Part shown: piece by piece, positions 8,830 through 64,000 of the stretch
Layout of the letters: every line of letters starts with the position of its first letter
Position numbering within the stretch: position 1 is the stretch's first letter
Source: Iphione sp. A-MEVVRFRX5
Lineage: Eukaryota
Reading direction: 5' to 3'
Length of the DNA stretch: 64,000 bases
NCBI GenBank assembly: GCA_976226885.1
Contig: OZ320313.1
Span: 64,976,001-65,040,000 of the forward strand
Position numbers and translations under genes: made by a program
The notes under the pieces: generated by a model
Seen by the model: only the letters and a program-made list of their open reading frames with translations
Told to the model about the DNA's origin: nothing
The model's database searches: none

Positions 8830-8900
8830 CTTCTCTTTCTCTTTTCCTTTCAGGTAAGTGTTTGGTCCATGCTGTTTATTTAACTTCTTTCACGGTAAGA
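8830..8900 (+). other. Candidate recursive splice site (ratchet point) with a 41-nt cryptic exon
   Basis: 22 consecutive pyrimidines (8830-8851) ending at the C of CAG (8851-8853), directly followed by GTAAGT (8854-8859); second donor ACG|GTAAGA at 8895-8900. Confidence 0.55.
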
Positions 8901-16768: not shown

Positions 16769-19040
16769 TTCTTTTTCCTCAAACAGCAGTATATATGATA
16801 TAATTGGTTATACGGAGGATTATTTAAATTCTGAAGATGTTCTGTCATTAACACTACCCATCCAGACACCAGACCATTGATGGACTTTACGGGGCCATTA
16901 GTCGAGTTGTACGCCGGCACCAAGTTACGTGTATAGCTACACTTATCTGTAGAAATCTTAGCCGTGGGACCAAGCCAGGTTTCCGTAGAAATTGGATCTA
17001 ATATAGACAAAAAGAAATAAAACTGACTCCTTCTTGGCGCGGATGTCGTGTTGTATCTATGTTGTCGCAGAGAATACGAAGACAGTGGTACTACCTGTTG
17101 TTTTTTCTCCTAAAGTGTAGGATAGCAACCATTAGTTCTTACGATATTATCCTGTGCACACGCAAAGACAGTCTTTTAATTTGTTGAAAAACAAATATCT
17201 TGAGCTTCGGAAGCCTAAAACTTAGCTAGATTTTAAGATTTTCTCTCCATCGAAGAAAATGCTCTTCAGATTCAGATAACTAAAAGTAAAACAATTTATC
17301 GCTGTCAAATTCCTTTTACCTGTTACCGTCTTCTGCTGTGGTTTTGGTATGATTCCCGTATTGACGGCTCAATTCCAATTCAGTAGTGTAGCTTTAAGGG
17401 GCACACGTTATATGCAGGACGTTCCTTGGGTGCTTCCTCTGGAAATATTCAGTGGCTTCCCACTTATAGCTGGATCTGGAGCACACCTGTGTATGAAACA
17501 TTCGAGCGGCGGTCTCCAACAAGCAAGGTGTAGCCTTGCGCTAGATCTAGTAAAAAGCAAATTGTGTAACGTCTGATTGGATTTGTAACCAAAGCATGAT
17601 TATGACAATTTGACTTCAAGCCTCCCGAGAGAAGAAGTATTGTTTTCCTTCTCTTCTTTTGTTGCTAGTCTCTAGTTTCGTTCTGCTCAGTAAGAACCTG
17701 CTTTTTGAATACCTCTCCGGCATTTAGATATCAACTTATCATCTAGACATTTGTATCGTTTTAGACATCGTTTATATGTACATGAATGTTGTGGTAGAAC
17801 TCCGATGTCTGTCAGTGGTGAAATGTGCTTTTGTGTAGATAATACTACGTTCGTGGTCAAGCCTGATTTTAATTCAGGGACTTATCTGTCGTGTGATATC
17901 ATAGACGTTTCTGAGGGTATATCAAAATCAAACGAAGCACCTGTCTCTTTTAAGTATTCAGAATTATTTTCCAACATTTTAAAACTATTACTGATGCCTG
18001 ACATATTGGTGCACTACTTCGCAAATACATATGTCCATATCTGTAAGAGCTACGTGGTACCAATCACTGAGTGTATTAGCCATGTCCTTAGTTTGCGAAA
18101 CAATTCGTACTTTCTTAGAGAAATATAGATATCCGTTTAAGAATTACTGGTGCTAACAAATCCAGAAACGGAGAAAGACAGTAGACAATGCCTGGTACAT
18201 ATCATGCCAGTGCACACATGGAGAAACACGCTTCTGGTATTATATTGCCTGAACCTGACGATATGGTCTGTGTACAAGGGTGGAAGAGACCTCTAGAGTA
18301 ATGTCGATCCTGGACAAAGGGGCAACATTTTACATTGTGCTTCACCTTATGTCTGCTAGAAGAAGCATAAATGAACTGTGGATTTTTGTAACTTTTAATA
18401 ACTCTGCCCACCTACCCCCCGCAACCGCACACACATGCACATGCACACACCAGGAAGGGGAGAACTCTAGAATTCCATTATCAAACTAGCATTCGACTGT
18501 GATCCCAGACTTTCATGGTTTTAATAGATTATGAACCAGTATATGTGTAACTTTTCTGAGGTAACTGACACCATGTCTGTCAGACGCACCCTCCGGAACT
18601 TGGCAAATAGACTCTGATCCTCCGAGCCGGCACTAGCTCTTGTTAACAAGATAACCGCCTAATACATGTTAGTTGTGCATCTTAATACATCTTTAGTTGT
18701 GCACGTGGAGGCAAACACCGTGATAAGTTGAGTACCGATCTCGGCACATTTTATGCACAGAAATCCGTAGAGTACCGCGTACTGATTTAAGAAGAATGTA
18801 TGTTTGATAGCATTTGTAACGCGTACATCTATCTATAATAGAGAGTCCTTGAACAAAGCTCATGAATGTAGGAGAGTAACATATCCGACAAGGCGAAATT
18901 TCAAATGTTAATAATCATGGAATGATCATTTACGTATTCTTGCTTATAAACTAGCTTACGAAATGAGGTTCTATTTTAGACAGCTATAGGCAATAAGTTA
19001 CAACGGCGGTTTGGAGAAAAAACTTGATGGAAATGATACG

Positions 19041-19270
19041 AAACTAGAGATGGTGTTTTCAGTTCGTCTCACACACAGATTAAAGAAAGCCCAGTTGACC
19101 TGACTAACATGTCTCCTAGTTGTCATGAGCCCCATAAATAATTCTGAATTGTGCGAAACTAGAGATGGTGTTTTCAGTTCGTCTCACACACAGATTAAAG
19201 AAAGCCCAGTTGACCTGACTAACATGTCTCCTAGTTGTCATGAGCCCCATAAATAATTCTGAATTGTGCG
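19041..19270. repeat. Perfect 115-bp tandem duplication
   Basis: 19041-19155 is identical to 19156-19270 (AAACTAGAGATGG...GAATTGTGCG). Confidence 0.95.
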
Positions 19271-22200
19271 ATTATCACTGAACCCCCCCCCCCCCCACAA
19301 TATGCTGTAAGACGAGAGGAACATAACGACATTGCACAGGCAATGTACTCGCTGACATTGCAAGGGCCAATACATTACAAGCAATCAGAGCACTGTATGT
19401 GGTGACATCTACTAACATGATTACTGTTCCCTGTCTGTCTTGTTTCCTATTGACCGTCTGTTTGACTCACGTCTCTGAGTCATGGCATGCTCACACAAAT
19501 CGTTCTCGCGGGTGTATTGGCAACCTCTGCAAGCCTGTTTTACCTCTGCAAGCCTGTTTTTTCCTACCCGCTCGGCTGTCAGTTTTTCCTCGGAATGAGA
19601 TACGATTTGATTTTTCAACGTCGATGTGTTTACTACATTTTGTATGTTGGTTTCTACCTGCACTGGTTATCTTTCGCTACTTTATTTTGAATGACGTGCC
19701 GTCAAATAAATTCATTTACGTTTCCGATTATCCTAAAGTGTTGTGTTTTGTTTTTCCAACTTTATATGCTGAAGCATGTGCTGCGCCTGGCAGGAATCTC
19801 CTTAAAACTATCATTACTCCCTTCAGACCAAGAGTGTAGTTCCGGAAATATGTGTTTTTCTTTGACTTGGATATTTTGTAGTCTGTTATCAGTTTATTTT
19901 GTACTTAACTTAATCTCTCAATGTCCATTAGTAAAGGTATCTATGAGAGACGACAATTTGGCGAAGCAGAGAACGAGACCTTGTGTCAGCCGACGGATGC
20001 CATTGTTTTCTTGCCTTTTAGTAATTTCAAGTTATAATATTATGGTGATTATTGTCCCCCACTTCCAAGAGGATAAGTATGGAACAATAAATAAAAAAAT
20101 GCGTTTGCAATTTTTATTGAGTGATATTAAAAAGTTATATAATGCACAAAAAACAATGATACAAAGTTAACTTGTTCCAAAGGATCGAGCTGTTAGTCCG
20201 CAGGGAGCACTGTATAAGATCTATTGGTTCTTTCTCCTAATCTCTTTAGTTATTCTGTGTCTCTCCCCAGGCAGTAATACAATGGCCGATCCGTGAAATG
20301 GACCGTCGTAAAAGTTGTCCCTAGCATCTCTAAACGCTATTAATTATAGATCGTAATCGCTGCCTCAAAACTGACCTGAGGGATAGCAGCTTAATGCTTG
20401 ATGATGATGTTAAAAAGGGCTTTCGATTATGCTTGGTGAAATTAAAAAAACGGTCTTCGATAAATGATATGGCACTTTTGGGCTTCATAAATTGATCTAT
20501 TCTCAAGGTGCAAATAAATGAATCAAGCGATTTGGAATGCCTCTACGTGAAGGTATTACCTTTTTTCGAAAAGTAAATCAATACTTCATTTTTAAATCCT
20601 TGTGTTCATGCTAATTTCCCAAATATATAATACATTGTGCTATGTAATTTTCATAAAACACTCCAACATTGGGGTATTTTTCTGAAATTGCCCTCATATG
20701 AAAAAAAAAACTTAGCTTCGCGTGTTGTGGGGATCGTGTATGTGAGACAACCCAGACTGCCAAAAGTGTCTCTCATTTCTCTGTCAGGACTAACCGTAAT
20801 GTGCACGAATAGAGGTGATCTTAGGCACCGTCTAGACATTTTCGCGACAACCTTTGTGCCTGTGATTTATTACATAAAGCATTCGTGAGACATGACAGCA
20901 GAACTTAATCAGGCTGAACTGAAACTGCTTACCTGAGAGTTGGTGGTGACATTGCTGACGCTGGTTTGCTACTTTACTGACAAGGTCGGCACTAAAGTGA
21001 GGCTTAGCGGGGAAAACCAACACTTATTGCCGTCATTGTGAGCCCTAAGGAGGCACTACAGTAGAACCTCTCATAAATCGGCTGGAAACATGAGATCCCA
21101 AAGGTAGCCGAAGCTGACAGGTGATTTTATCAAACTAGCGGTAAGTGAGCAATTAAATGTCACGGCCTGCAGAAATTTTGCCGTCGCCAATATAGGGATG
21201 AATAGGCATCTTGAACCCTTGCTCAGATCACGCTTTTGGAATCACTCACTTTCGTAACGCCCTCCGTTGCACTTGCAATGTAACAGCATCCATGCTGTTG
21301 GCTGCCAAGCTCCACATATCCATACACTGTATGTAAAAAAATTCTAATGGTTCCTTTTAAAGTCCAGCTAAATACCAAGTAACAAAGTACCGACTTTGAA
21401 ATAGTGAAGTACTTGTAGTTGAATATGTGTACTTGTTTTATATTTTTTGAAGTACTTTCCTGTCGTTCCGTACCTGTGTGAAGGGACAGCCGCGATACGT
21501 TTTCTTTTCGACAAAACGACCTTAACTATCATATCACTTTTTTCCCATTATTTTTTAAGCATTTAGTTTTACGAGCGGGGCAGTACTTATTGATCAGAGA
21601 CCAAGATGATCGATGTTGAACTAATAAATACTGTGCACAGTGGCTTTTACTCGGCTCGGAACCCTCAAGATCGCTCTTATAGCATAATGTATGTATTTGG
21701 TTCCAACAATGGAAAGTTTTTGTGCCCGCGAGGCGCCTGTCAGTTTTTAATCATAGAGGATGAAATATGGGAGCCCTTAGAGGGAGTTATTGCGGCCTTA
21801 CTCGTACTTTTAACCAGGCTTAACCATTGTAAAAGGCGCACTAGTGTCTGCCTCGAGGTGCTGCCGTAGGTGGAGAAGTCGCCCATTTAACATTAATTCT
21901 CCGGGGTTGGGGCCTATGCCGTGGCTGTTTTTCAGGCCGCTGGTTCTTTGTAATAGTGAAATAACATTGGGGGCTTATTTCGAGAAGTTCCGTTATATAA
22001 AAAGCCGGGACATAATTTGATTTTTTTTGTGTACCTAGAACACGCCTCTGCTTTATCCGATCTAGCATGCTTATGGTCCGGAAGGCCTGCAGACATAAGC
22101 AGACCTGTAATGTACGCAGTTCTCCCACATGTATTGAATTCAAGTTTATGTTTTGGGACGAATCTCGGCTGCTTTTAATCCAGAGTTATTTGTTATCGTG

Positions 22201-26811: not shown

Positions 26812-28709
26812 AGAGGAAAACTGGCAGAACAACCAGCAAAAGTGGGTCTTTGCCAATCATCTATTCTATCATAAGCACTCCAGCAAGATTTGGCGTACTA
26901 ATCTCATTGTACCTAGGCCGCTTCTCATTGAACTTGGGAGGAGTTGGTTTCTACAGGAAAAAGGAGTGATTAATTGCTCCTCATAGCTTCAAAGAGGCTG
27001 TAAATCTTCCCTCCTCGGTGATAAAGCTGGGAACGATGTTCCTCGTGGCGATCACCGAAGCGTACCGATAAAGCAGTGTCAGATGAATGACAATCACTTA
27101 AGATGACGCACCAAAAACGTACCTTTGCCCGCCTAAGATGGAGTGGAGACGCTAGCAGTAGACAGTATAAGGTATTCGTATCAGTCCGGCACGAAGGAAT
27201 CGGATGTATAGTGTCAGAGCCCATCCCACTTTTCAGTGTCTACGCAGCCTCACCAGGGAAATTCAATTCATTTTCGTGATTTCCTGTAGTAAGTCCGTTT
27301 TAAATTTAATTTACAAGTGTCTATTTCTTTGCTGTCATTATGAACAGTTCTCTTTTGCTATTACCGTTTTCTTATGTGTTGCCTCTATTTGCCTCGCTGT
27401 ATGTTCAGTGTGTTCTCAAATTTTCTTCCGTCAACAGCCACCATTCTGTCCCTGATTATCTGCCTGTCTAGCTGGCTTTGCGTCTGCTTCTGTCTGTCAC
27501 CATGTATGTGTCCCTTATATTTATTCTTTTAGTTTGTTTTCCCAAATCAATCATTCAGTTTATCTTTTTTCTATTTACCTGGAAGGTTTTCGATTTTTCA
27601 TTCTTTGTATCGCCACCGTCTCCTTAATTGTCTTTCTATATAGATGTATACAGATAAGCACATATAGACATCTATACGTATTTATATGTGTATGCACATG
27701 CATGTATACACCTTGAGTTACAAAGTTCGAGCTCAGTAAGCATGAATAACGCATGGTGTAAACACAGTCTATATGCATGGATTCATACGTTTCCAGCGAG
27801 GCATGAACCTAATTTCCCAGAGTGACCCTAGCAATATTTCCACTCGGCTCGCTATCAGACGATGGACGTTACCAGACCATTTGACACGATTCACTAATGA
27901 CTCGCACTGATTGACATATTGATGACATGGCGACATTATGATGTCTCACAGACATTGCGTAACTACTACATGCGCATTGGGGGAAAAGTTACAACCTTAA
28001 TTCATTTAGTGAATCATGTCAGTGATATACATACAAAACGAAGAGTGCCTTTGTTTGCGGAATGCCCTTCTTGACTCGTGAATTTACATTATGGGTGAAT
28101 ATCATTGTTTTTTATATAGTACGTCACAGAAGTAAGCACGTAGATGGCTGCTGGCAACGTAAAGGGCTCCTCATGCATATCATTGATACGCAGGACCCAC
28201 ATAGTGCTTATTTGAAAGTCCTCTGAAGTAAGACCACTCGGATGGACGGACAAGGTCGAGGCCTTTATATCAGGACACGCTAATCTGATGGTGTGCTTCA
28301 TTAAATCAGGGCAAGCGACGAAGCACGTCTGTCTGAATTTGGTCACGCAGACAAGAGAACCCGCACAGAGAACACTGGTGTGGCGTTCACAGTAAGATGA
28401 TGTTAATTCGCAGGCGTCTAGGTTATTTTCACATTCGTAATGAAAGTCGTTTTTTAGGCAAAGACGCTTGACATTGGCCTTCATGACGAACGACGTCGCC
28501 AGGTTATCCTGGAATACATGTAGAACTACATGTACATATACGTCACGATTGAAAATAACGTTGCTTTGTTATTTTATTTTTTTTTATTTTATTGCCTTCT
28601 TACTTTTGACCTGTAATTTCCACTCACACATTCAAGAGAGAATATAAAATTATTATTTTCTCCTCTATACCTATCACTTTATTACATTTTAAATGAGATT
28701 TAATTTAAA

Positions 28710-28940
28710 TCACCAAAACATAGCCTGATGAGCTCTGATGAGCGAAACCCTGTTATTTCTCTATTTACTGTTGCACCGAGATGACAATAATTTATTATGA
28801 CAGAGAAATAAACCTCCACTTACATGAATAAGAAAGGACTATATCCTAGCATGGAGAGCCATTAAGTGATAGGGTATATCAATGGCCAGGAGACATAGTA
28901 ACAACATTCCATTTGCCACAACAGGGTAGCTATTTGGTGA
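28710..28940 (+). ncRNA. Type I hammerhead ribozyme with a 165-nt insertion in stem III; predicted cleavage 3' of 28928 (GUA)
   Basis: Core CTGATGA 28725-28731; stem II GCTC/GAGC with TGAT loop 28732-28743; GAA 28744-28746; stem III ACCCTGTT (28747-28754) pairs with AACAGGGT (28920-28927); H17 is A28928; stem I ATAGC/GCTAT (28720-28724 with 28929-28933), AAC bulge, then TCACCAA/TTGGTGA (28710-28716 with 28934-28940). All invariant core nucleotides are present. Confidence 0.9.
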
Positions 28941-29813
28941 CTAGACAGCTCTTTTTTCGTCTCACACTGAAAATAACCTCGCGTTTTGTTTTCCATGTAC
29001 ATGTTATTCGTTGTCGTTAGAAGCTAAAACCACGAAATATTGGTTGTTTAGAAATGAACCAGTGTTTTATGTATAAATATATTCTTAGGGCCCCAAGTAC
29101 TATTACATCTGCCATATTCAATTTCCTGAGTAATGTGCATTAAAGGGCAAAAAATATATAATAATGTTGGGAAAGATAGATCCCCTCTGCATTGACATTT
29201 AGGAAGGAAACATAGATCAGCTTCAACTCTCTGCTATGGACTCCCCCTCCTCCTTTCACAGCAAAACATGATGGAAGAGAAAATTACTCCAAATGACACT
29301 AACTCTGTAATGCTTCTACGTTTACATAACAAAACATATTTACAAGCAACGCCTCAAACTATCGCAATATTGATGTGTTATGGCTCTAGAATAAGTCACC
29401 TTGTGATTCCGAATGGACTGTGAAATGTGCAGAGAATACAATTCGTAATTTTCTACTCCAACCTGCTTATATTTAGAGTTGAAAAGAAGATCCCCAAGAC
29501 ATCATCTCGAGCAATCTGTGCAAAGATGTTTCGCAGCCTAAAAGAATCCTTATCCTTAACTCACGTAATGAAGAGGCCACCCAATTACAAGTAACTGTGT
29601 TTCTGTTCGTAGCCTTGTAATTATGCTTATAGGTAGGCGAATGTGATTTATCCCCAAACTAGGAGGTCATTACTCAACTTTGTTCCTAGCCTTGTCAGAC
29701 TTAAGTGGTTGCATTTCGTAGCCGTGCTCCCGAGTGGCCTCTTCTCACATTGGACCAAGTTACCGCGGTAACCACCCTGGGTTAGAAAGATCTTTTATGA
29801 TTGATGTCCAGTT

Positions 29814-29938
29814 TGACGTCAGCGCCACCTAACCGTCGACCCGCATGTCACAGGAGGTTAACCAATCAGCAAGCACCTTACTTGGACCGTTTGTCCATGG
29901 TGTAGATAGCAGGCGACTAAACTGGGCTTTGATTGGTT
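29814..29938. promoter_or_regulatory. CRE plus an inverted pair of CCAAT boxes
   Basis: TGACGTCA at 29814-29821; AACCAATCA at 29860-29868 and its exact reverse complement TGATTGGTT at 29930-29938. Confidence 0.35.
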
Positions 29939-32348
29939 GTGGGTCCTCATGCTCTCGGGCTGGCTAGTGTAGATAACTGGTGTCCCAGACCGCCGTTATG
30001 AAAGGTGTGCGTGGCGTTTCCCGCCGGCAAGCAGAAAAGCACGGGGCAATGACAGACCTATCAAAGCCGCTCTGGTTTGGTACTGAATATAGATACACAA
30101 TCAACATGGGAATCTCACGCAAAGAACTTCCTGCTACGTAATATACCGTCCATGTTGTAAACGACTGTTTGACATCTACTGTGATTTGCCGACCGGTGTC
30201 CTTGTACATATTTTCATGTGAGATTATGTCGGGTTTCATGTTAAGAAAATTCATCTGGCTCTCGGTCGAAGCCTTTGGTTATAGATGTAAGGTATTTTTT
30301 TAAAGTACATGTACTTCTGATGCTGCGGTAAACAGATATGATGGAAGCGGGAGAAGAAACACTGGATAGTGTAATACTGTACTGTAATTCATTGATTGCC
30401 AACATTGTCATATGATGCAAAACAGCCGCTTTCAAGTACATGTATACACATTGAAACTTCCAAGGCTAGTCTTGGCGAGCTATTTCTACTGGCGGACTGT
30501 AAGACTCTTATCATTTCCCTCGTCGCTTAGCACTGGAGCACCCAGTCCATCTTGCACTAATTCTGTCCAGACTAGACCTTCTTTGAGCCCGTTTGGAGAT
30601 TTGCTGGGTTCACGATATGTTTCCTTTTCGACACAAGACAAAAGAAACGAATGACAGGGCGTGAGGAAGCAGATGTTAGCCTTGGAGGAAGGTCTTTTGA
30701 AGGACTTTCAGTCTGCGATTTGATGTAGAATCCCGTTATTATAATGCTATTCGTCACCTGTGGAACCAAGAGGCAGGTCCTCCAAGCCTAAAGACGTACT
30801 ACAGCTTCAGCTGTCTGTTTAGTGTAATTTTACAATTAGCTTTTGTCTTTTGATTATTCACATGAGCCTTATGTTAGGTGCTCACTGGAATCTGAGTTTT
30901 AAGTACAAAGTTCGCGTTTTAGTAGTATAAGAAACCGAGAAAATGAACTCGACTCCACCCTAAAGGTTTTCGCGGTCTCTAGGCAGCATGTTTGTACCCT
31001 GCACTTCTCAATTTGTCCTCATTTTCGGCCCCTGTTCTTGGGTATAGGCACGTATACGTAAAACAAGGTTTATAACAGTGTTTATACTAGCCCTGTTTTT
31101 TCCGCGTTCAGAATTGCTGTCAAGGGAGCCATTGGTGGTGATTGACATTGATACGGGCAGGTCTCAAGGGGACACGAGACCTTGGTGGAAAGCGAATGGT
31201 TGTTTGAAGCAACATAGTGCTATGTGCACACTACTGCACTCGCTCTATTAGTAAATGGTAAATTGGCGAGAGCCTCAAGTATTCCTGACATAGAAACAAC
31301 AGACTTCCTGATGCAAATTCCTTACAAGCTCTTGTGAACAGTCATTGTGTTCGAGGATACCGTGTTTGGTCATGTGAGCGTGATAAATCGGTGAACTGTG
31401 GTTAACCCCTGGAGGACCTGCAGTGCTTAGGTTCCCTCCTCGGATTATTCTCTCTAGCCTGCTTACTTATAAGGAATTCCAGACTTTTTATCGTAGTTTC
31501 ACGTTTTATGGTTTGAAATAAAAAGTATTTGACAGAGATGAATATAGCAGCGAAAATCTTTTTCACTTTCGAAACCTGACGTCACTGGTATCCGAACCAC
31601 AGTGTTGACTGTGCTCGCTTATTTTCCGGTCCTTATAAATTGAAAGAGTTTAGAACATAAAGCTACAGCCCAGTAGACTTTATTGTGATTGTCCCAGGAC
31701 CATGCCAGCTGTCTGCACCAAACTTCAATTTCGGAGGTATTCCATCCACGCCTCTCCGATTGAGGAGGCGACTGGGAGCAGACATGGGGCAGCATGGACG
31801 TACTTAACGTATTGAAAGTCACTGCCACCAGAACCGTAATGATGATTGTTTTCATGCTACATTTGTTGCGTGTCACCTTGGAGCATGACTTGCCATAGTG
31901 ACCACAATGCTGCATGATAACTTTACAATACATGACGTCAAACACTTCTCGGCCATTTGATTCCTTCCATCTCACAAAGCAGGTGACAATACGACCTCGT
32001 TTGCTGCTCTCGTGTTTCAGATTTGAAAGTACAGTTTCATACATGTCCGTAGATCGTAGTCCTGTCAGTGTTGCAATTCCCTGAAGTCATAAGAATGACG
32101 TGTGTGCAAAGAATGTTAAAAAAAATCATACGCGCACACACAGACACATTCACACATATAGGCACACACGCACAGACAGATCATCATGCATACCATGAGA
32201 AACTGGCCGTCAGTTACAAAACTTAGGAAGATGCGAACTCTTCACCTTCCGGACACACCGGCCAAACTCCGTGACTATGCATCCTTCAATCTGAGACTGC
32301 GTCACAGCGTAGGAACATTGGCCAGATCGATGCAGAATCGATTAAAAA

Positions 32349-42860: not shown

Positions 42861-42935
42861 TGTTCTTCTTTTTGCAGGTGAGTAGATTGGATGTAAGACG
42901 GAATGTAAGTTAATATTGCCATCCAAGAAGTAAGT
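42861..42935 (+). other. Candidate recursive splice site with a cluster of downstream donors
   Basis: TGTTCTTCTTTTTGCAG (42861-42877) directly followed by GTGAGT; further donors GTAAGA at 42893, GTAAGT at 42905 and GTAAGT at 42930. Confidence 0.55.
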
Positions 42936-61740: not shown

Positions 61741-62040
61741 TCCCTTACTTCCCCACTACTAGAACCACTGCAGGAACCACCACCACCACCCACCACTACA
61801 GCCCCCCACCTACAAATAACAGCTACCTTCCACTAACCAGTGACCCTTACCTGACCAGCAGTATACACCACCTACTTTCACCGTCTTTCTTCTTCATCTT
61901 CACCCTCACTATTGCCAGCTACCTGTATCTTTTTCACTAGCAGCAGTCATTTGCCATTACGCATCACCACTATCCATTTGTTTCACCATCACTACCGACC
62001 ACTACCAGGGCCACTCCCCACCACTACCAACATACCCGTC
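61741..62040. repeat. Degenerate ACC/ACT-rich low-complexity tract
   Basis: Strongly C/A-skewed + strand with decayed (ACC)n and (ACT)n triplets. Confidence 0.7.
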
Positions 62041-62789
62041 CAGGAGCAAATCAATCAACACAAAGTACCGTAAAAGCGCGAGCAGCGGACCCGAAATCGA
62101 TCAAAGCATAACACTATGGGGTAGGCGCCTGGCTGAGTCCTCTGCCTCACTGATCAAGGCCATATTACCGTAAAAACTTGCCAGTCCGACAGCGCATTCA
62201 TCACTTGACTGTAAGTACTTCCCCATACCTGGCGCGCTAAATAACCAAGTAACCTATATTGTCTAGTGGAAATCATTTGTCAAGTAGGTGTAAGATTGCC
62301 CTACGGCAATAAAAATTACAAAAATGGAGAAAATATCCTTTGTCAAGCAATATCCATCGTATGTCTTTTTTATCTTCCGATTTTTAAAGATAAATGATAT
62401 TGAAATTCCTGTATGAAATAAACATTCGATCACAGAACAAAACGTACAAGAAATATAAATCCTGCCCATACGTTTCCTTTTTTTGAAAGTGGTCACGTCA
62501 ATGATCCATACCTTCTGGGTGTTTATGTATGTTTTCCTTACGTGTTGCGTTGTCAGGTTGTTCGGAATTGAAACGTTTTGAAGACTTTATCCAGGGCCCC
62601 TAGTCCTTCACTCATCCACACAGTAGCTCCTCTTATCCATCTAGCCATTTGGAACCATTCAGCCAGTTTGTGCCATAGATCACCGAGTACATTAGCTGCT
62701 GCACAGCCCAACGATTGACCCACCTTCAAGAGACCGTCTTCCGTATCAGTAGGTTTGCCCCTGCCTGGGGGATGAAATGTTTGAGGGTC

Positions 62790-64000
62790 GAGTCCATGCC
62801 AGCCCCCTCCTCCCAACCAGCCTCACCCCAGGCCGTCCAGCAGCTGCACTACCACCACGACCACCATAATTACCACCACCACCATCACCTGACCAGGTGG
62901 AACGGTGGACCTAGCCAACCTAGCCAACCCATCCCCATGTTGCCGAATCACTGCCCCTCTTCCTGGTCGCAATCGATGAGTCCCTCCAGCATTGATTTTC
63001 CGGAGGGCAGGCATATTCATGACGCTCATTACTACCGGCTGTCGGCCGTAGCTTCCACTACCGGTCCAGTCAGCTAGCATTGCTACTACTTGCCATTGCT
63101 TCCCACACCAGTTCTGGCCATCTGGACCACCCCTTTGCTGACAGTACCTGCCAAGAAGCAAGCTCCTATACTAGACCGTACTGCCGTCGGGACCGCTCGG
63201 TCTCGCCCCTGTGTTGCTACCACCGCCTTCACCACCATCACAAGCACGAGCAACAGCAGCAGGAGCAGCAGTAGGAGACAGCAGCAGCTGTGAGTGCCGC
63301 AGATGGCGTAATTATTGAACAGGGTGGGCAGGGCAGCGGGAGCAGCGGTGAGTGGCTAAATAGCCTAGTAGTGTGCAGATGGCCAGAGGAGCAGCTGGAT
63401 CTGCAGGAGGCCACGCCAGACATGACTACAGCAGAAGAAGGAGTAGGAGGGGAAGCAGCAGCAGCAGCCGCAGCAGCAGGTGCAAGTGGCATATAGACGA
63501 GGCCGTTGGAGCGCTGGCCCCAGTCATGTAGCGACCGCCTCGACGACTGGCAGTTACAGCAAGAGCAAGAGCAAGAGCAGCAGCACCAGCAGCAGTGGTA
63601 CCCCCAGCATTGCCAGTCAGTATCGCTCTTTCTCCTGCTGCCTTCGACACTACCGTTGCTACGAACTGTTCGACTGGCTGCTGCTCGCAACCACCACGAG
63701 CAGTTGTTGTACAGGCGGCGTATGGTGTCGCTGCCGCCAGTCACACGCTTATCGGGAGTAGCCGGGCAGTAGGGCCGGGTTTCATCCAGCCAACACCGCT
63801 ACCACCGTGCACTGACGGCCAAGCCCTGGATGATGTTGCTGGCTTGCATGGCGCCTCCGCCCGACGCTGGAGGAGACGTACATTCATGCGTCGTCGTCCA
63901 CCTGTGGATTAACCCTCCGTGGAGTACAGCTACCGGCTACCACCGCCCGACCATGAGGGATCATCGCTGAGTGAGCCGCGCACTGTACTACTACCAGCGC
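62790..64000. repeat. GC-rich (~60%) degenerate trinucleotide region (CAC/CAG/GCA), possibly a decayed coding sequence
   Basis: Two sampled lines were 57% and 62% GC; His-, Gln- and Ala-rich runs appear in several overlapping short ORFs; no recognisable domain; the region runs off the window end. Confidence 0.55.

What the first reader, a model, noticed from the sequence alone, without database searches (positions are those of the whole stretch)
28710..28940. Complete hammerhead ribozyme split by a 165-nt structured insertion in stem III
Seen: every invariant hammerhead nucleotide (C3-U4-G5-A6-N7-G8-A9, G10.1:C11.1, G12-A13-A14, A15.1:U16.1, GUA triplet), an 8-bp stem III, and a 5+7-bp stem I with a 3-nt AAC bulge. 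The cleavage strand lies 165 nt downstream of the core. The insertion is itself foldable: TATTTCTCT (28754-28762) pairs with AGAGAAATA (28802-28810), AGGA/TCCT forms a small hairpin, and GCCATT (28858-28863) pairs with AATGGC (28881-28886). It also contains AATAAA at 28807-28812. Known: type I hammerheads use a stem I bulge-loop II tertiary contact, and they occur in metazoan retrozymes, Penelope-like elements and amniote introns. Discontinuous hammerheads are known (mammalian CLEC2), but there the insertion is in stem I. Inference: this is a functional, possibly selected, discontinuous type I variant that descriptor searches with short loop limits would miss. No second copy is visible in this window, so a simple tandem retrozyme is not supported here.
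Basis: partly seen in the sequence, partly recalled or inferred. Interest (0 to 1): 0.9.

Follow-up and report, generated by a model that had tools for sequence, protein, structure and literature searches.

The report
Hammerhead ribozyme with giant stem-III loop
A complete self-cleaving hammerhead ribozyme motif really is here, with its catalytic half and cut site held together across 165 unrelated bases; it is most likely the tail end of a Penelope-type jumping gene, and it has a ribozyme shape that the papers I read do not describe.

Summary
It is a type I hammerhead (HHR) with every core nucleotide, a 4-bp stem II, a 7+5-bp stem I with an AAC bulge, and an 8-bp helix III closing a 165-nt loop. 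Cleavage would fall after A28928.

It is not chance. A Watson-Crick-only descriptor gave 0 hits in 400 shuffles of the window. RNAfold's MFE and centroid both form the three-way junction, and it persists with 400-nt flanks.

- The insert is no more structured than shuffles (z +0.35).
- The insert is no better than shuffled inserts at letting the ribozyme form.
- The "decoy" strand is a chance 6-mer.

Rfam misses the motif at gathering thresholds. I found no second copy, tandem array or PLE ORF in the window, and no homologue or sequencing run elsewhere, so selection and activity are untested.

Best reading: a solitary, 5'-truncated Penelope-like-element or retrozyme-type 3' end of about 390-410 bp. 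It has a candidate target-site duplication, and the cut site lies 33-39 nt from the element end. It sits in the sense direction in a long + strand intron.

The scan's first readers noted the same split architecture (130-273-nt loops) at at least nine other places in this genome. Those notes are unchecked. The papers I read describe metazoan PLE hammerheads as minimal, dimer-dependent motifs, so I class this as a new variant of a known kind.

The parts
28710..28724 (+). Stem I, 5' strand: UCACCAA (distal 7 bp), AAC bulge 28717-28719, AUAGC (proximal 5 bp)
   Evidence: Sequence. All 12 pairs are Watson-Crick. Pair probability is 0.74-0.97 with flanks of 0-100 nt.
28725..28731 (+). Catalytic core strand C3-U4-G5-A6-U7-G8-A9
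28732..28743 (+). Stem II hairpin GCUC-UGAU-GAGC (G10.1:C11.1 at its base)
   Evidence: Pair probability is at least 0.96 in all contexts. The stem sequence is identical to the Rfam HH9 consensus.
28744..28747 (+). G12-A13-A14 and A15.1
28747..28754 (+). Helix III, 5' strand ACCCUGUU
   Evidence: 8 Watson-Crick pairs with 28920-28927.
28755..28919 (+). 165-nt loop III ('insert'). It contains AATAAA at 28807-28812 and has no recognisable identity.
   Evidence: Not unusually structured. Not better than shuffles at permitting the ribozyme fold. No similarity to the ribozyme halves or to anything else in the window. No good splice donor.
28920..28927 (+). Helix III, 3' strand AACAGGGU (ends in G16.2-U16.1)
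28928..28928 (+). A17; predicted cleavage between 28928 and 28929 (GUA triplet, NUH rule)
   Evidence: The sequence and established hammerhead rules. Cleavage itself was not tested.
28929..28940 (+). Stem I, 3' strand GCUAU-UUGGUGA
28543..28570 (+). Left copy of an imperfect ~28-nt direct repeat (exact 10-mer TGAAAATAAC at 28550-28559): candidate target-site duplication
   Evidence: The local alignment score of 27 was reached by 8 of 500 shuffles.
28962..28990 (+). Right copy of the direct repeat (exact 10-mer at 28968-28977)
28571..28961 (+). Candidate retroelement body (391 nt; 28560-28967 if only the exact 10-mer is the duplication). The 5' part is T-rich with TATAAAA at 28643-28649. The hammerhead is in the 3' half. 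A T6 run lies at 28952-28957. The cut site is 33-39 nt from the right end.
   Evidence: The boundaries are inferred from the direct repeat only. No other copy was available to confirm them.
8846..8859 (+). Context: recursive-splice-like site CCTTTCAG|GTAAGT on the + strand
   Evidence: (2 matches, 0.06 expected, both on +).
42870..42883 (+). Context: second recursive-splice-like site TTTTGCAG|GTGAGT on the + strand

Best explanation
This is a genuine hammerhead ribozyme. It belongs to a short, solitary retroelement copy of about 390-410 bp. The copy is most likely the 3'-terminal part of a 5'-truncated Penelope-like element, or a non-autonomous retrozyme-type relative that such elements mobilise.

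In this lineage helix III is not the usual 1-3-bp stub. It is an 8-bp helix that closes over a long, sequence-unconstrained domain (165 nt here).

How it would work. Once the + strand is transcribed through 28940, stems I, II and III assemble around the canonical core. The RNA should then cut itself after A28928 as a monomer, without the dimer that minimal PLE hammerheads need. In a full element or a tandem array this cut, about 33-39 nt from the unit end, would trim read-through or multimeric transcripts to unit length.

At this locus the copy is a passenger. It lies in the sense direction in a long + strand intron.

Shown: the motif, its non-random nature and its predicted fold. Inferred: the retroelement identity, the boundaries, cleavage and its role.
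For: - Motif exact and complete.
- Chance excluded: 0 Watson-Crick-only hits in 400 shuffles, against an observed 5+4+8+7 bp.
- The MFE and centroid of 28705-28945 both form the three-way junction.
- The ribozyme-constrained fold is within 0.5-0.7 kcal/mol of the MFE. Helix pair probabilities are 0.5-0.97 with flanks of 0 to 400 nt.
- An 8-bp helix III is far longer than the 1-2 bp described for canonical metazoan type I hammerheads (PMC4209133). This argues that the long loop is native, not an accident in a short hairpin.
- An imperfect ~28-nt direct repeat with an exact 10-mer flanks a ~390-410-nt unit. Metazoan retrozymes and PLEs are reported with large duplications or 30-40-bp tails (PMC7229834; PMC8557442; PMC11167929).
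- Most PLE insertions are 5'-truncated and keep a single terminal repeat (bioRxiv 10.64898/2026.07.22.740005).
- At least nine unchecked first-reader notes in the same genome describe split hammerheads with 130-273-nt loop III at PLE 3' ends or pLTRs. One puts the cut site 33 nt from the element end, the same distance as here.
- Both recursive-splice-like sites are on the + strand, so the motif is probably transcribed in the sense direction.
Against: - There is no PLE ORF, pLTR pair, tandem repeat or second copy anywhere in the 64-kb window.
- No homologue was retrieved from any collection, so family membership rests on analogy and on unchecked notes.
- The candidate duplication is only marginally significant (p about 0.016, tested post hoc) and imperfect (22 of 28 matches plus indels). 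If it is an old duplication, a perfectly intact ribozyme is unexpected under neutrality.
- Published metazoan PLE hammerheads are minimal: long helix II and no helix III. This one has a 4-bp helix II and looks more like canonical or HH9-type motifs.
- No RNA data are available.
Confidence: 0.6

Rival explanations
1. A canonical, continuous hammerhead-bearing element suffered a secondary 165-nt insertion into loop III. On this reading the split is an accident, and the copy is a damaged relic that only happens still to be foldable.
For: - The insert has no structure beyond chance.
- It is no better than shuffled sequence at allowing the ribozyme fold.
- It has its own AATAAA.
- Nothing in the papers read describes such loops in metazoan hammerheads.
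Against: - An 8-bp perfect helix III is not what canonical metazoan type I motifs have (1-2 bp, PMC4209133). An insertion into such a hairpin would leave almost no closing helix.
- The insert has no duplication, poly(A) or terminal repeats at its ends.
- Unchecked notes report the same architecture, with different loop lengths, at many PLE ends in this genome.
Confidence: 0.12
2. A host-selected (domesticated) intronic ribozyme. It would work like HH9/HH10 in amniote introns, cutting the nascent pre-mRNA of the surrounding long, recursively spliced + strand intron. The 165-nt spacer would delay ribozyme assembly.
For: - The orientation is sense relative to two recursive-splice-like sites.
- AT skew is negative across the window.
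- All 59 or so constrained positions are intact although the flanking repeat has diverged.
- The stem II sequence is identical to the HH9 consensus.
Against: - No orthologue or conservation data exist.
- The HH9 match is not significant (13.4 bits against a gathering score of 52; E 5.5).
- Hammerheads in animal genomes are overwhelmingly retroelement-borne (PMC7229834, PMC4209133).
- The same architecture is noted at PLE ends elsewhere in the genome.
Confidence: 0.1
3. A splicing-gated ribozyme. The insert would be a spliceosomal intron of the retroelement (PLEs are known to keep introns), and its removal would convert the motif into a short-helix-III hammerhead.
For: - PLEs retain introns next to their hammerheads (PMC4209133).
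- A reasonable acceptor, catttgccacaacag|G, lies at 28924.
- One first-reader note proposes this for another locus.
Against: - No good donor exists. The only GT near the start of the insert is cct|GTTATT, matching 5 of 9 consensus positions. The other donors in the insert match 3-6 of 9. The two recursive-splice-like sites in the window match their pattern exactly.
- The unspliced form already folds as a complete ribozyme.
Confidence: 0.05
4. A chance assembly of hammerhead-like strings with no biological meaning.
For: A relaxed descriptor that allows G-U pairs and 4/3/4-bp stems gives 0.09 hits per shuffled window.
Against: - With Watson-Crick pairs only there were 0 hits in 400 shuffles, even at minimal thresholds. 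The real site has 24 Watson-Crick pairs.
- My analytic estimate is about 1e-10 per window.
Confidence: 0.01

Closest known systems
Canonical metazoan type I hammerheads of non-LTR retrozymes (Cervera and de la Pena 2020, PMC7229834)
   Same: - Type I topology and a full canonical core.
- A 4-bp helix II.
- A helix I of 5-6 bp followed by a bulge or internal loop.
- A host element that is AT-rich and a few hundred bp long.
- Duplications larger than 4 bp.
   Different: - Helix III there is 1-3 bp with a 2-4-nt loop. Here it is 8 bp closing 165 nt.
- Retrozymes are tandem arrays. Here there is one copy and no tandem repeat.
- The loop 2 (UGAU) and bulge (AAC) sequences do not match the archetypal tertiary-contact nucleotides.
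Minimal hammerheads in pLTRs of Penelope-like elements (Cervera and de la Pena 2014, PMC4209133; review PMC6765202)
   Same: - Type I topology.
- Sits near the 3' end or terminal repeat of a retroelement.
- 5'-truncated solo copies are common.
- 30-40-bp 'tail' or large duplications at insertion ends.
   Different: - PLE minimal motifs have a long helix II (6-8 bp), an extra unpaired base, no helix III or a palindromic stub, and cleave only as dimers.
- This motif has a 4-bp helix II and a stable 8-bp helix III, so it should act as a monomer.
- There is no RT/GIY-YIG ORF in the window.
Discontinuous hammerhead of mammalian Clec2 3' UTRs (Martick et al. 2008; summarised in PMC6155905 and PMC2920678)
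   Same: Enzyme and substrate strands lie on the same transcript, separated by more than 100 nt of unrelated sequence.
   Different: - Clec2 is type III, with the large insert (150-1500 nt) in helix I.
- Here the insert is in helix III of a type I motif, and the enzyme strand is transcribed first.
[quoted passage not shown]
   Same: - Type I topology.
- Sense-oriented in an intron (inferred here).
- Identical CUGAUGAGCUC...GAGCGAAAC core and stem II sequence.
   Different: - HH9 is continuous and conserved across amniotes.
- This motif reaches only 13.4 bits against a gathering score of 52.
- Nothing is known about its conservation.
Type I hammerheads with a large helix III in EN-deficient PLEs of fungi and protists (PMC4209133)
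   Same: - PLE-borne.
- A stable helix III.
- Active as a single motif (kobs 1.97 per min at 10 mM Mg2+ for the Serpula example).
   Different: - Those are continuous motifs in telomere-associated elements of fungi and protists.
- The paper does not describe loops of 100 nt or more.

Membership tests
Hammerhead ribozyme (Rfam clan CL00010) | Conserved core C3-U4-G5-A6-N7-G8-A9 and G12-A13-A14 | tested here: met
   CUGAUGA at 28725-28731 and GAA at 28744-28746.
Hammerhead ribozyme (Rfam clan CL00010) | A15.1:U16.1 pair and an N-U-H cleavage triplet | tested here: met
   A28747:U28927 and G-U-A at 28926-28928.
Hammerhead ribozyme (Rfam clan CL00010) | Three helices I, II and III radiating from the core | tested here: met
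   12, 4 and 8 Watson-Crick pairs respectively. All are present in the MFE and the centroid and are robust to flanking sequence.
Hammerhead ribozyme (Rfam clan CL00010) | Score at or above the gathering threshold of an Rfam hammerhead model | tested here: not met
   No hit at gathering thresholds. The best is HH9 at 13.4 bits against 52, and it aligns to the core plus a wrong nearby 3' strand. The 165-nt loop explains the failure. A scan with the loop deleted could not be run with these tools.
Hammerhead ribozyme (Rfam clan CL00010) | Site-specific self-cleavage | not testable with these tools
   This needs in vitro transcription. No sequencing run was listed for end mapping.
Hammerhead ribozyme (Rfam clan CL00010) | Covariation in the helices among homologues | not testable with these tools
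   No homologue was retrieved.
Metazoan non-LTR retrozyme | Tandem repeats of a 170-400-bp unit, each with a type I hammerhead | tested here: not met
   There is a single copy and no tandem array. Only a ~28-nt flanking direct repeat at 418-nt spacing is present. Monomer copies are reported in the literature.
Metazoan non-LTR retrozyme | Short helix III (1-3 bp, 2-4-nt loop) | tested here: not met
   Helix III is 8 bp and closes 165 nt.
Metazoan non-LTR retrozyme | Loop 1 or bulge to loop 2 tertiary contact | tested here: inconclusive
   A 3-nt bulge (AAC) lies 5 bp from the core, as in the Schistosoma and HH9 motifs. Loop 2 is UGAU, not the CAAAUA or CAAAAA type. Sequence alone cannot settle the contact.
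Penelope-like element (pLTR hammerhead) | Hammerhead inside a terminal repeat flanking an RT plus GIY-YIG ORF | tested here: not met
   No such ORF or domain in the window: 3-frame view of 26900-30700, Pfam on the 29 longest ORFs. A 5'-truncated solo end would lack the ORF, so this does not exclude PLE origin.
Penelope-like element (pLTR hammerhead) | Minimal motif: long helix II, no or palindromic helix III, dimer-dependent | tested here: not met
   Helix II is 4 bp. Helix III is 8 bp and not palindromic.
Penelope-like element (pLTR hammerhead) | Variable large duplication or a 30-40-bp tail at insertion ends | tested here: inconclusive
   An imperfect ~28-nt direct repeat is present, p about 0.016, with an exact 10-mer core.
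Discontinuous (Clec2-type) hammerhead | Enzyme and substrate strands on one transcript, separated by more than 100 nt | tested here: met
   165 nt lie between the two helix III strands.
Discontinuous (Clec2-type) hammerhead | Type III topology with the large insert in helix I, located in a 3' UTR | tested here: not met
   The insert is in helix III of a type I motif. The context looks intronic, not 3' UTR.

The most novel reading that the evidence does not exclude
The long-loop-III hammerhead is the native, monomer-active ribozyme of a whole lineage of Penelope-like elements and their non-autonomous derivatives in this animal genome. Helix III encloses most of the terminal repeat. The cut about 33 nt from the unit end defines the RNA end, and perhaps the 30-40-bp 'tail' seen at PLE insertions. 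If so, metazoan PLE hammerheads are not always minimal, dimer-only motifs, and descriptor or covariance-model searches have been missing a class of them.
Probability: 0.35. Interest if true: 0.7.

Novelty: new variant of a known kind. Interest (0 to 1): 0.5.

Why it matters
Hammerheads in animal genomes are catalogued with descriptors and covariance models that assume a short helix III. Metazoan PLE hammerheads are described as minimal motifs that need to dimerise and cleave poorly.

A complete type I hammerhead whose helix III spans 165 nt is invisible to Rfam at curated thresholds. If it recurs at PLE ends as the scan's other notes suggest, it would show three things:
- Some PLE or retrozyme lineages carry a monomer-competent ribozyme.
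- Hammerhead censuses undercount.
- Discontinuity can occur in helix III as well as in helix I (the Clec2 case).

It also gives a concrete system for testing how a delay between the synthesis of the enzyme and substrate strands affects co-transcriptional cleavage inside a long intron. As a single passenger copy with no expression or conservation data, this locus is only one example.

Tried and rejected
- **Rfam at gathering thresholds, whole window:** nothing. At permissive E-values there was only a partial HH9 match and noise.
- **Second copy, tandem array or tRNA-like part in the window:** none.
- **PLE or other transposon proteins:** none in a 3-frame reading of 26900-30700. None by Pfam on the 29 longest ORFs. 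I did not run all 147 ORFs in one alignment call because of the typed-text limit.
- **Homologues elsewhere:**
  - The exact 24-nt core gave 0 hits in metagenome contigs and 0 in prokaryotic genome contigs.
  - The 20-nt substrate strand gave 0 hits in metagenomes.
  - A degenerate core pattern in viral contigs gave 47 hits. I did not inspect them and assumed they are unrelated hammerhead cores of viral contigs.
  - The neighbouring 131-aa ORF, used as a handle to fetch allelic or orthologous contigs, had no protein hit.
  - The scan's own look-alike index was blank.
- **Sequencing runs:** none was listed for 601 or 4001 bases, so read laying could not be used.
- **Collapsed-dimer idea** (the insert as two decayed ribozyme halves) and the sister note's 'decoy strand': the best matches are 6-7-mers at chance level.
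- **Insert selected not to interfere with folding:** rejected. 33-45% of shuffled inserts do as well for stems I and III, and 10% for stem II.
- **Insert as an intron:** weak donors only.
- **Literature:** I found no description of loop III of 100 nt or more in a metazoan hammerhead. Hammann 2012, Seehafer 2011 and Lunse 2017 were not held, so prior description cannot be excluded.

Full report
**1. What is there**

- Stem I 5' strand: UCACCAA-AAC-AUAGC (28710-28724).
- Core strand: CUGAUGA (28725-28731).
- Stem II: GCUC-UGAU-GAGC (28732-28743).
- G12 A13 A14 (28744-28746).
- Helix III: ACCCUGUU (28747-28754) pairs with AACAGGGU (28920-27), 8 Watson-Crick pairs including A15.1:U16.1.
- A17 at 28928.
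- Stem I 3' strand: GCUAU-UUGGUGA (28929-28940).
- Loop III is 165 nt (28755-28919).

Because stem I is open-ended, the topology is type I.

**2. Is it more than chance**

CUGAUGA-N(6-36)-GAAA occurs six times in the window against 1.6 expected. Only this occurrence has helices.

My descriptor (core, stem II, GAAA, helix III with a loop up to 400 nt, H17, stem I) finds only this site on either strand.

- With G-U pairs allowed and thresholds of 4/3/4 bp, shuffles give 0.09 hits per window.
- With Watson-Crick pairs only, 400 dinucleotide shuffles give no hit at all, even at those minimal thresholds. The real site has 5+4+8 contiguous pairs plus a 7-bp extension of stem I across the bulge.

A back-of-envelope estimate is about 1e-10 per window. 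The motif is a real hammerhead by descent, not a coincidence.

**3. Does it fold**

RNAfold on 28705-28945 gives an MFE of -54.8 kcal/mol. Both the MFE and the centroid contain stems I (7+5 bp), II and III with the core unpaired (z -1.97).

Forcing the hammerhead costs only 0.5-0.7 kcal/mol relative to the unconstrained MFE. The mean pair probabilities of the four helices stay at 0.5-0.97 when 0 to 400 nt of natural flank are added on each side.

In a growing-transcript series the junction appears as soon as 28941 is reached.

**4. What the insert is not**

- Alone, it folds no better than shuffles (z +0.35; 129 of 200 shuffles fold at least as well).
- Replacing it with dinucleotide shuffles leaves the ribozyme helices as probable as with the native insert in 33-45% of trials for stems I and III, and in 10% for stem II. 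There is no sign that it was shaped either to fold or to stay out of the way.
- It has no similarity to the ribozyme halves. The CUAUUU 'decoy' raised in a sister note is a chance 6-mer. It also has no similarity to anything else in the window.
- It has no convincing splice donor. The best candidates match 5-6 of 9 consensus positions. By contrast the window's two recursive-splice-like sites match their pattern exactly.

**5. Why I think the long loop is native**

Canonical metazoan type I hammerheads have a helix III of 1-2 bp with a 2-4-nt loop. PLE hammerheads often have none (PMC4209133; PMC7761336; PMC6765202).

An accidental insertion into such a hairpin would leave almost no closing helix. 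Here eight perfect pairs close the loop, which is what a long-range helix needs. This is an inference, not a demonstration.

**6. Context**

The window has no tandem array, no second copy, no tRNA and no recognisable protein domain. The three + frames around the motif show no RT or GIY-YIG remnant.

An imperfect direct repeat flanks the motif at 28543-28570 and 28962-28990.

- It has 22 identities plus indels and an exact 10-mer, TGAAAATAAC.
- The alignment score of 27 was reached by 8 of 500 shuffles.
- Read as a target-site duplication, it delimits an element of 391 nt, or 408 nt if only the 10-mer counts. The cut site is then 33 or 39 nt from the right end.

Within that unit the 5' part is T-rich with TATAAAA at 28643-28649. 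A T6 run at 28952-28957 follows the ribozyme. I attach no weight to these two features without other copies.

Two Y-tract-CAG|GTRAGT sites (8846-8859 and 42870-42883) both lie on the + strand, 2 against 0.06 expected. AT skew is mostly negative. A scan note places an IQCJ-SCHIP1-like exon 21.5 kb upstream of the window (unchecked). The locus is therefore probably inside a long + strand intron, and the ribozyme is in the sense orientation.

**7. Relation to what is known**

- Rfam does not report the motif at gathering thresholds. The permissive scan aligns the core and stem II to HH9 (13.4 bits, E 5.5) with a wrong nearby 3' strand.
- The Clec2 discontinuous hammerhead is type III with the insert in helix I (PMC6155905; PMC2920678). 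This is the other discontinuity.
- Metazoan retrozymes are tandem 170-400-bp units with continuous type I motifs (PMC7229834).
- PLE pLTRs carry minimal, dimer-dependent motifs (PMC4209133; PMC6765202).
- Fungal and protist PLEs have a 'large helix III', but as continuous motifs.
- A 2026 preprint argues that animal retrozymes derive from PLE terminal repeats and that most PLE insertions are 5'-truncated.
- PLE insertions carry a 30-40-bp tail.
- Craig et al. noted PLEs with hammerhead cores that fit no descriptor.
- I found no paper describing a metazoan hammerhead with a loop III of 100 nt or more. Three relevant papers were not held.

**8. Earlier notes of this scan**

First readers recorded at least nine other 'split hammerhead' loci in the same genome. 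Loop III is 130-273 nt, mostly at PLE 3' ends or in both pLTRs. One has 'compensatory changes', and one has the cut site 33 nt from the element end. None has been checked, and I could not read those windows.

They are leads, but they fit the reading that this architecture is a family trait. The 33-nt figure coincides with my boundary, which I derived independently. So the scan had found this kind of thing before, on other DNA of this genome.

**9. Verdict**

Claims of function and selection are untested, and 'structured insertion' is not supported.

The best explanation (0.6) is a solitary 5'-truncated PLE or retrozyme-type 3' end. Its native ribozyme has a long helix III domain and should cleave as a monomer after A28928.

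Rivals:
- Secondary insertion into a continuous motif (0.12).
- Domesticated intronic ribozyme (0.10).
- Intron-gated ribozyme (0.05).
- Chance (0.01).

One tension remains unexplained. If the imperfect 28-nt repeat is an old duplication, the perfectly intact ribozyme would imply constraint. If only the exact 10-mer is the duplication, the tension disappears.

No external copies, alleles or RNA data could be obtained. The decisive steps are therefore a genome-wide copy and covariation analysis and a cleavage assay.

Noticed in passing
window 8846-8859 and 42870-42883 (+): Two polypyrimidine-CAG|GTRAGT sites are the only matches to the pattern, and both are on the + strand (2 found, 0.06 expected).
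   Followed up: partly
window 19039-19271: A perfect 2.0-copy tandem duplication of a 115-bp unit (100% identity), which implies a very recent event or an assembly artefact.
   Followed up: no
window 27637-27707 (-): A weak Rfam match to the mir-297 precursor family (34.2 bits against a gathering score of 90; E 0.031) lies in a TG/CA-rich, low-complexity stretch. It is probably compositional.
   Followed up: no
window 28725-28742: The string CTGATGAG occurs twice, 10 nt apart (CTGATGAGCT CTGATGAGC). Stem II and loop 2 therefore look like a 10-nt duplication of the core strand. The second copy has no stem II of its own and cannot serve as an alternative core.
   Followed up: partly
window 28643-28649 and 28952-28957: TATAAAA lies about 60 nt upstream of stem I, and a T6 run lies 12 nt after it. 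This would suit a small transcription unit with an upstream TATA and an oligo-T terminator, but it is speculative without other copies.
   Followed up: no
window 28089-28484 (-): A 131-aa cysteine-rich ORF lies on the opposite strand just upstream of the element. It has no Pfam domain and no homologue in the protein collection, so it is probably spurious.
   Followed up: yes
window 62001-64000: GC rises to 0.53, with several overlapping ORFs on both strands and alanine- and cysteine-rich translations. This may be a CpG-island-like or promoter region at the window's end.
   Followed up: no
L001-L047 (IMG/VR contigs): The core pattern CTGATGAGCTCNNNNGAGCGAAAC occurs in 47 viral contigs. The same stem II sequence is therefore used in viral-contig sequences unrelated to this locus. 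I did not inspect these loci.
   Followed up: no
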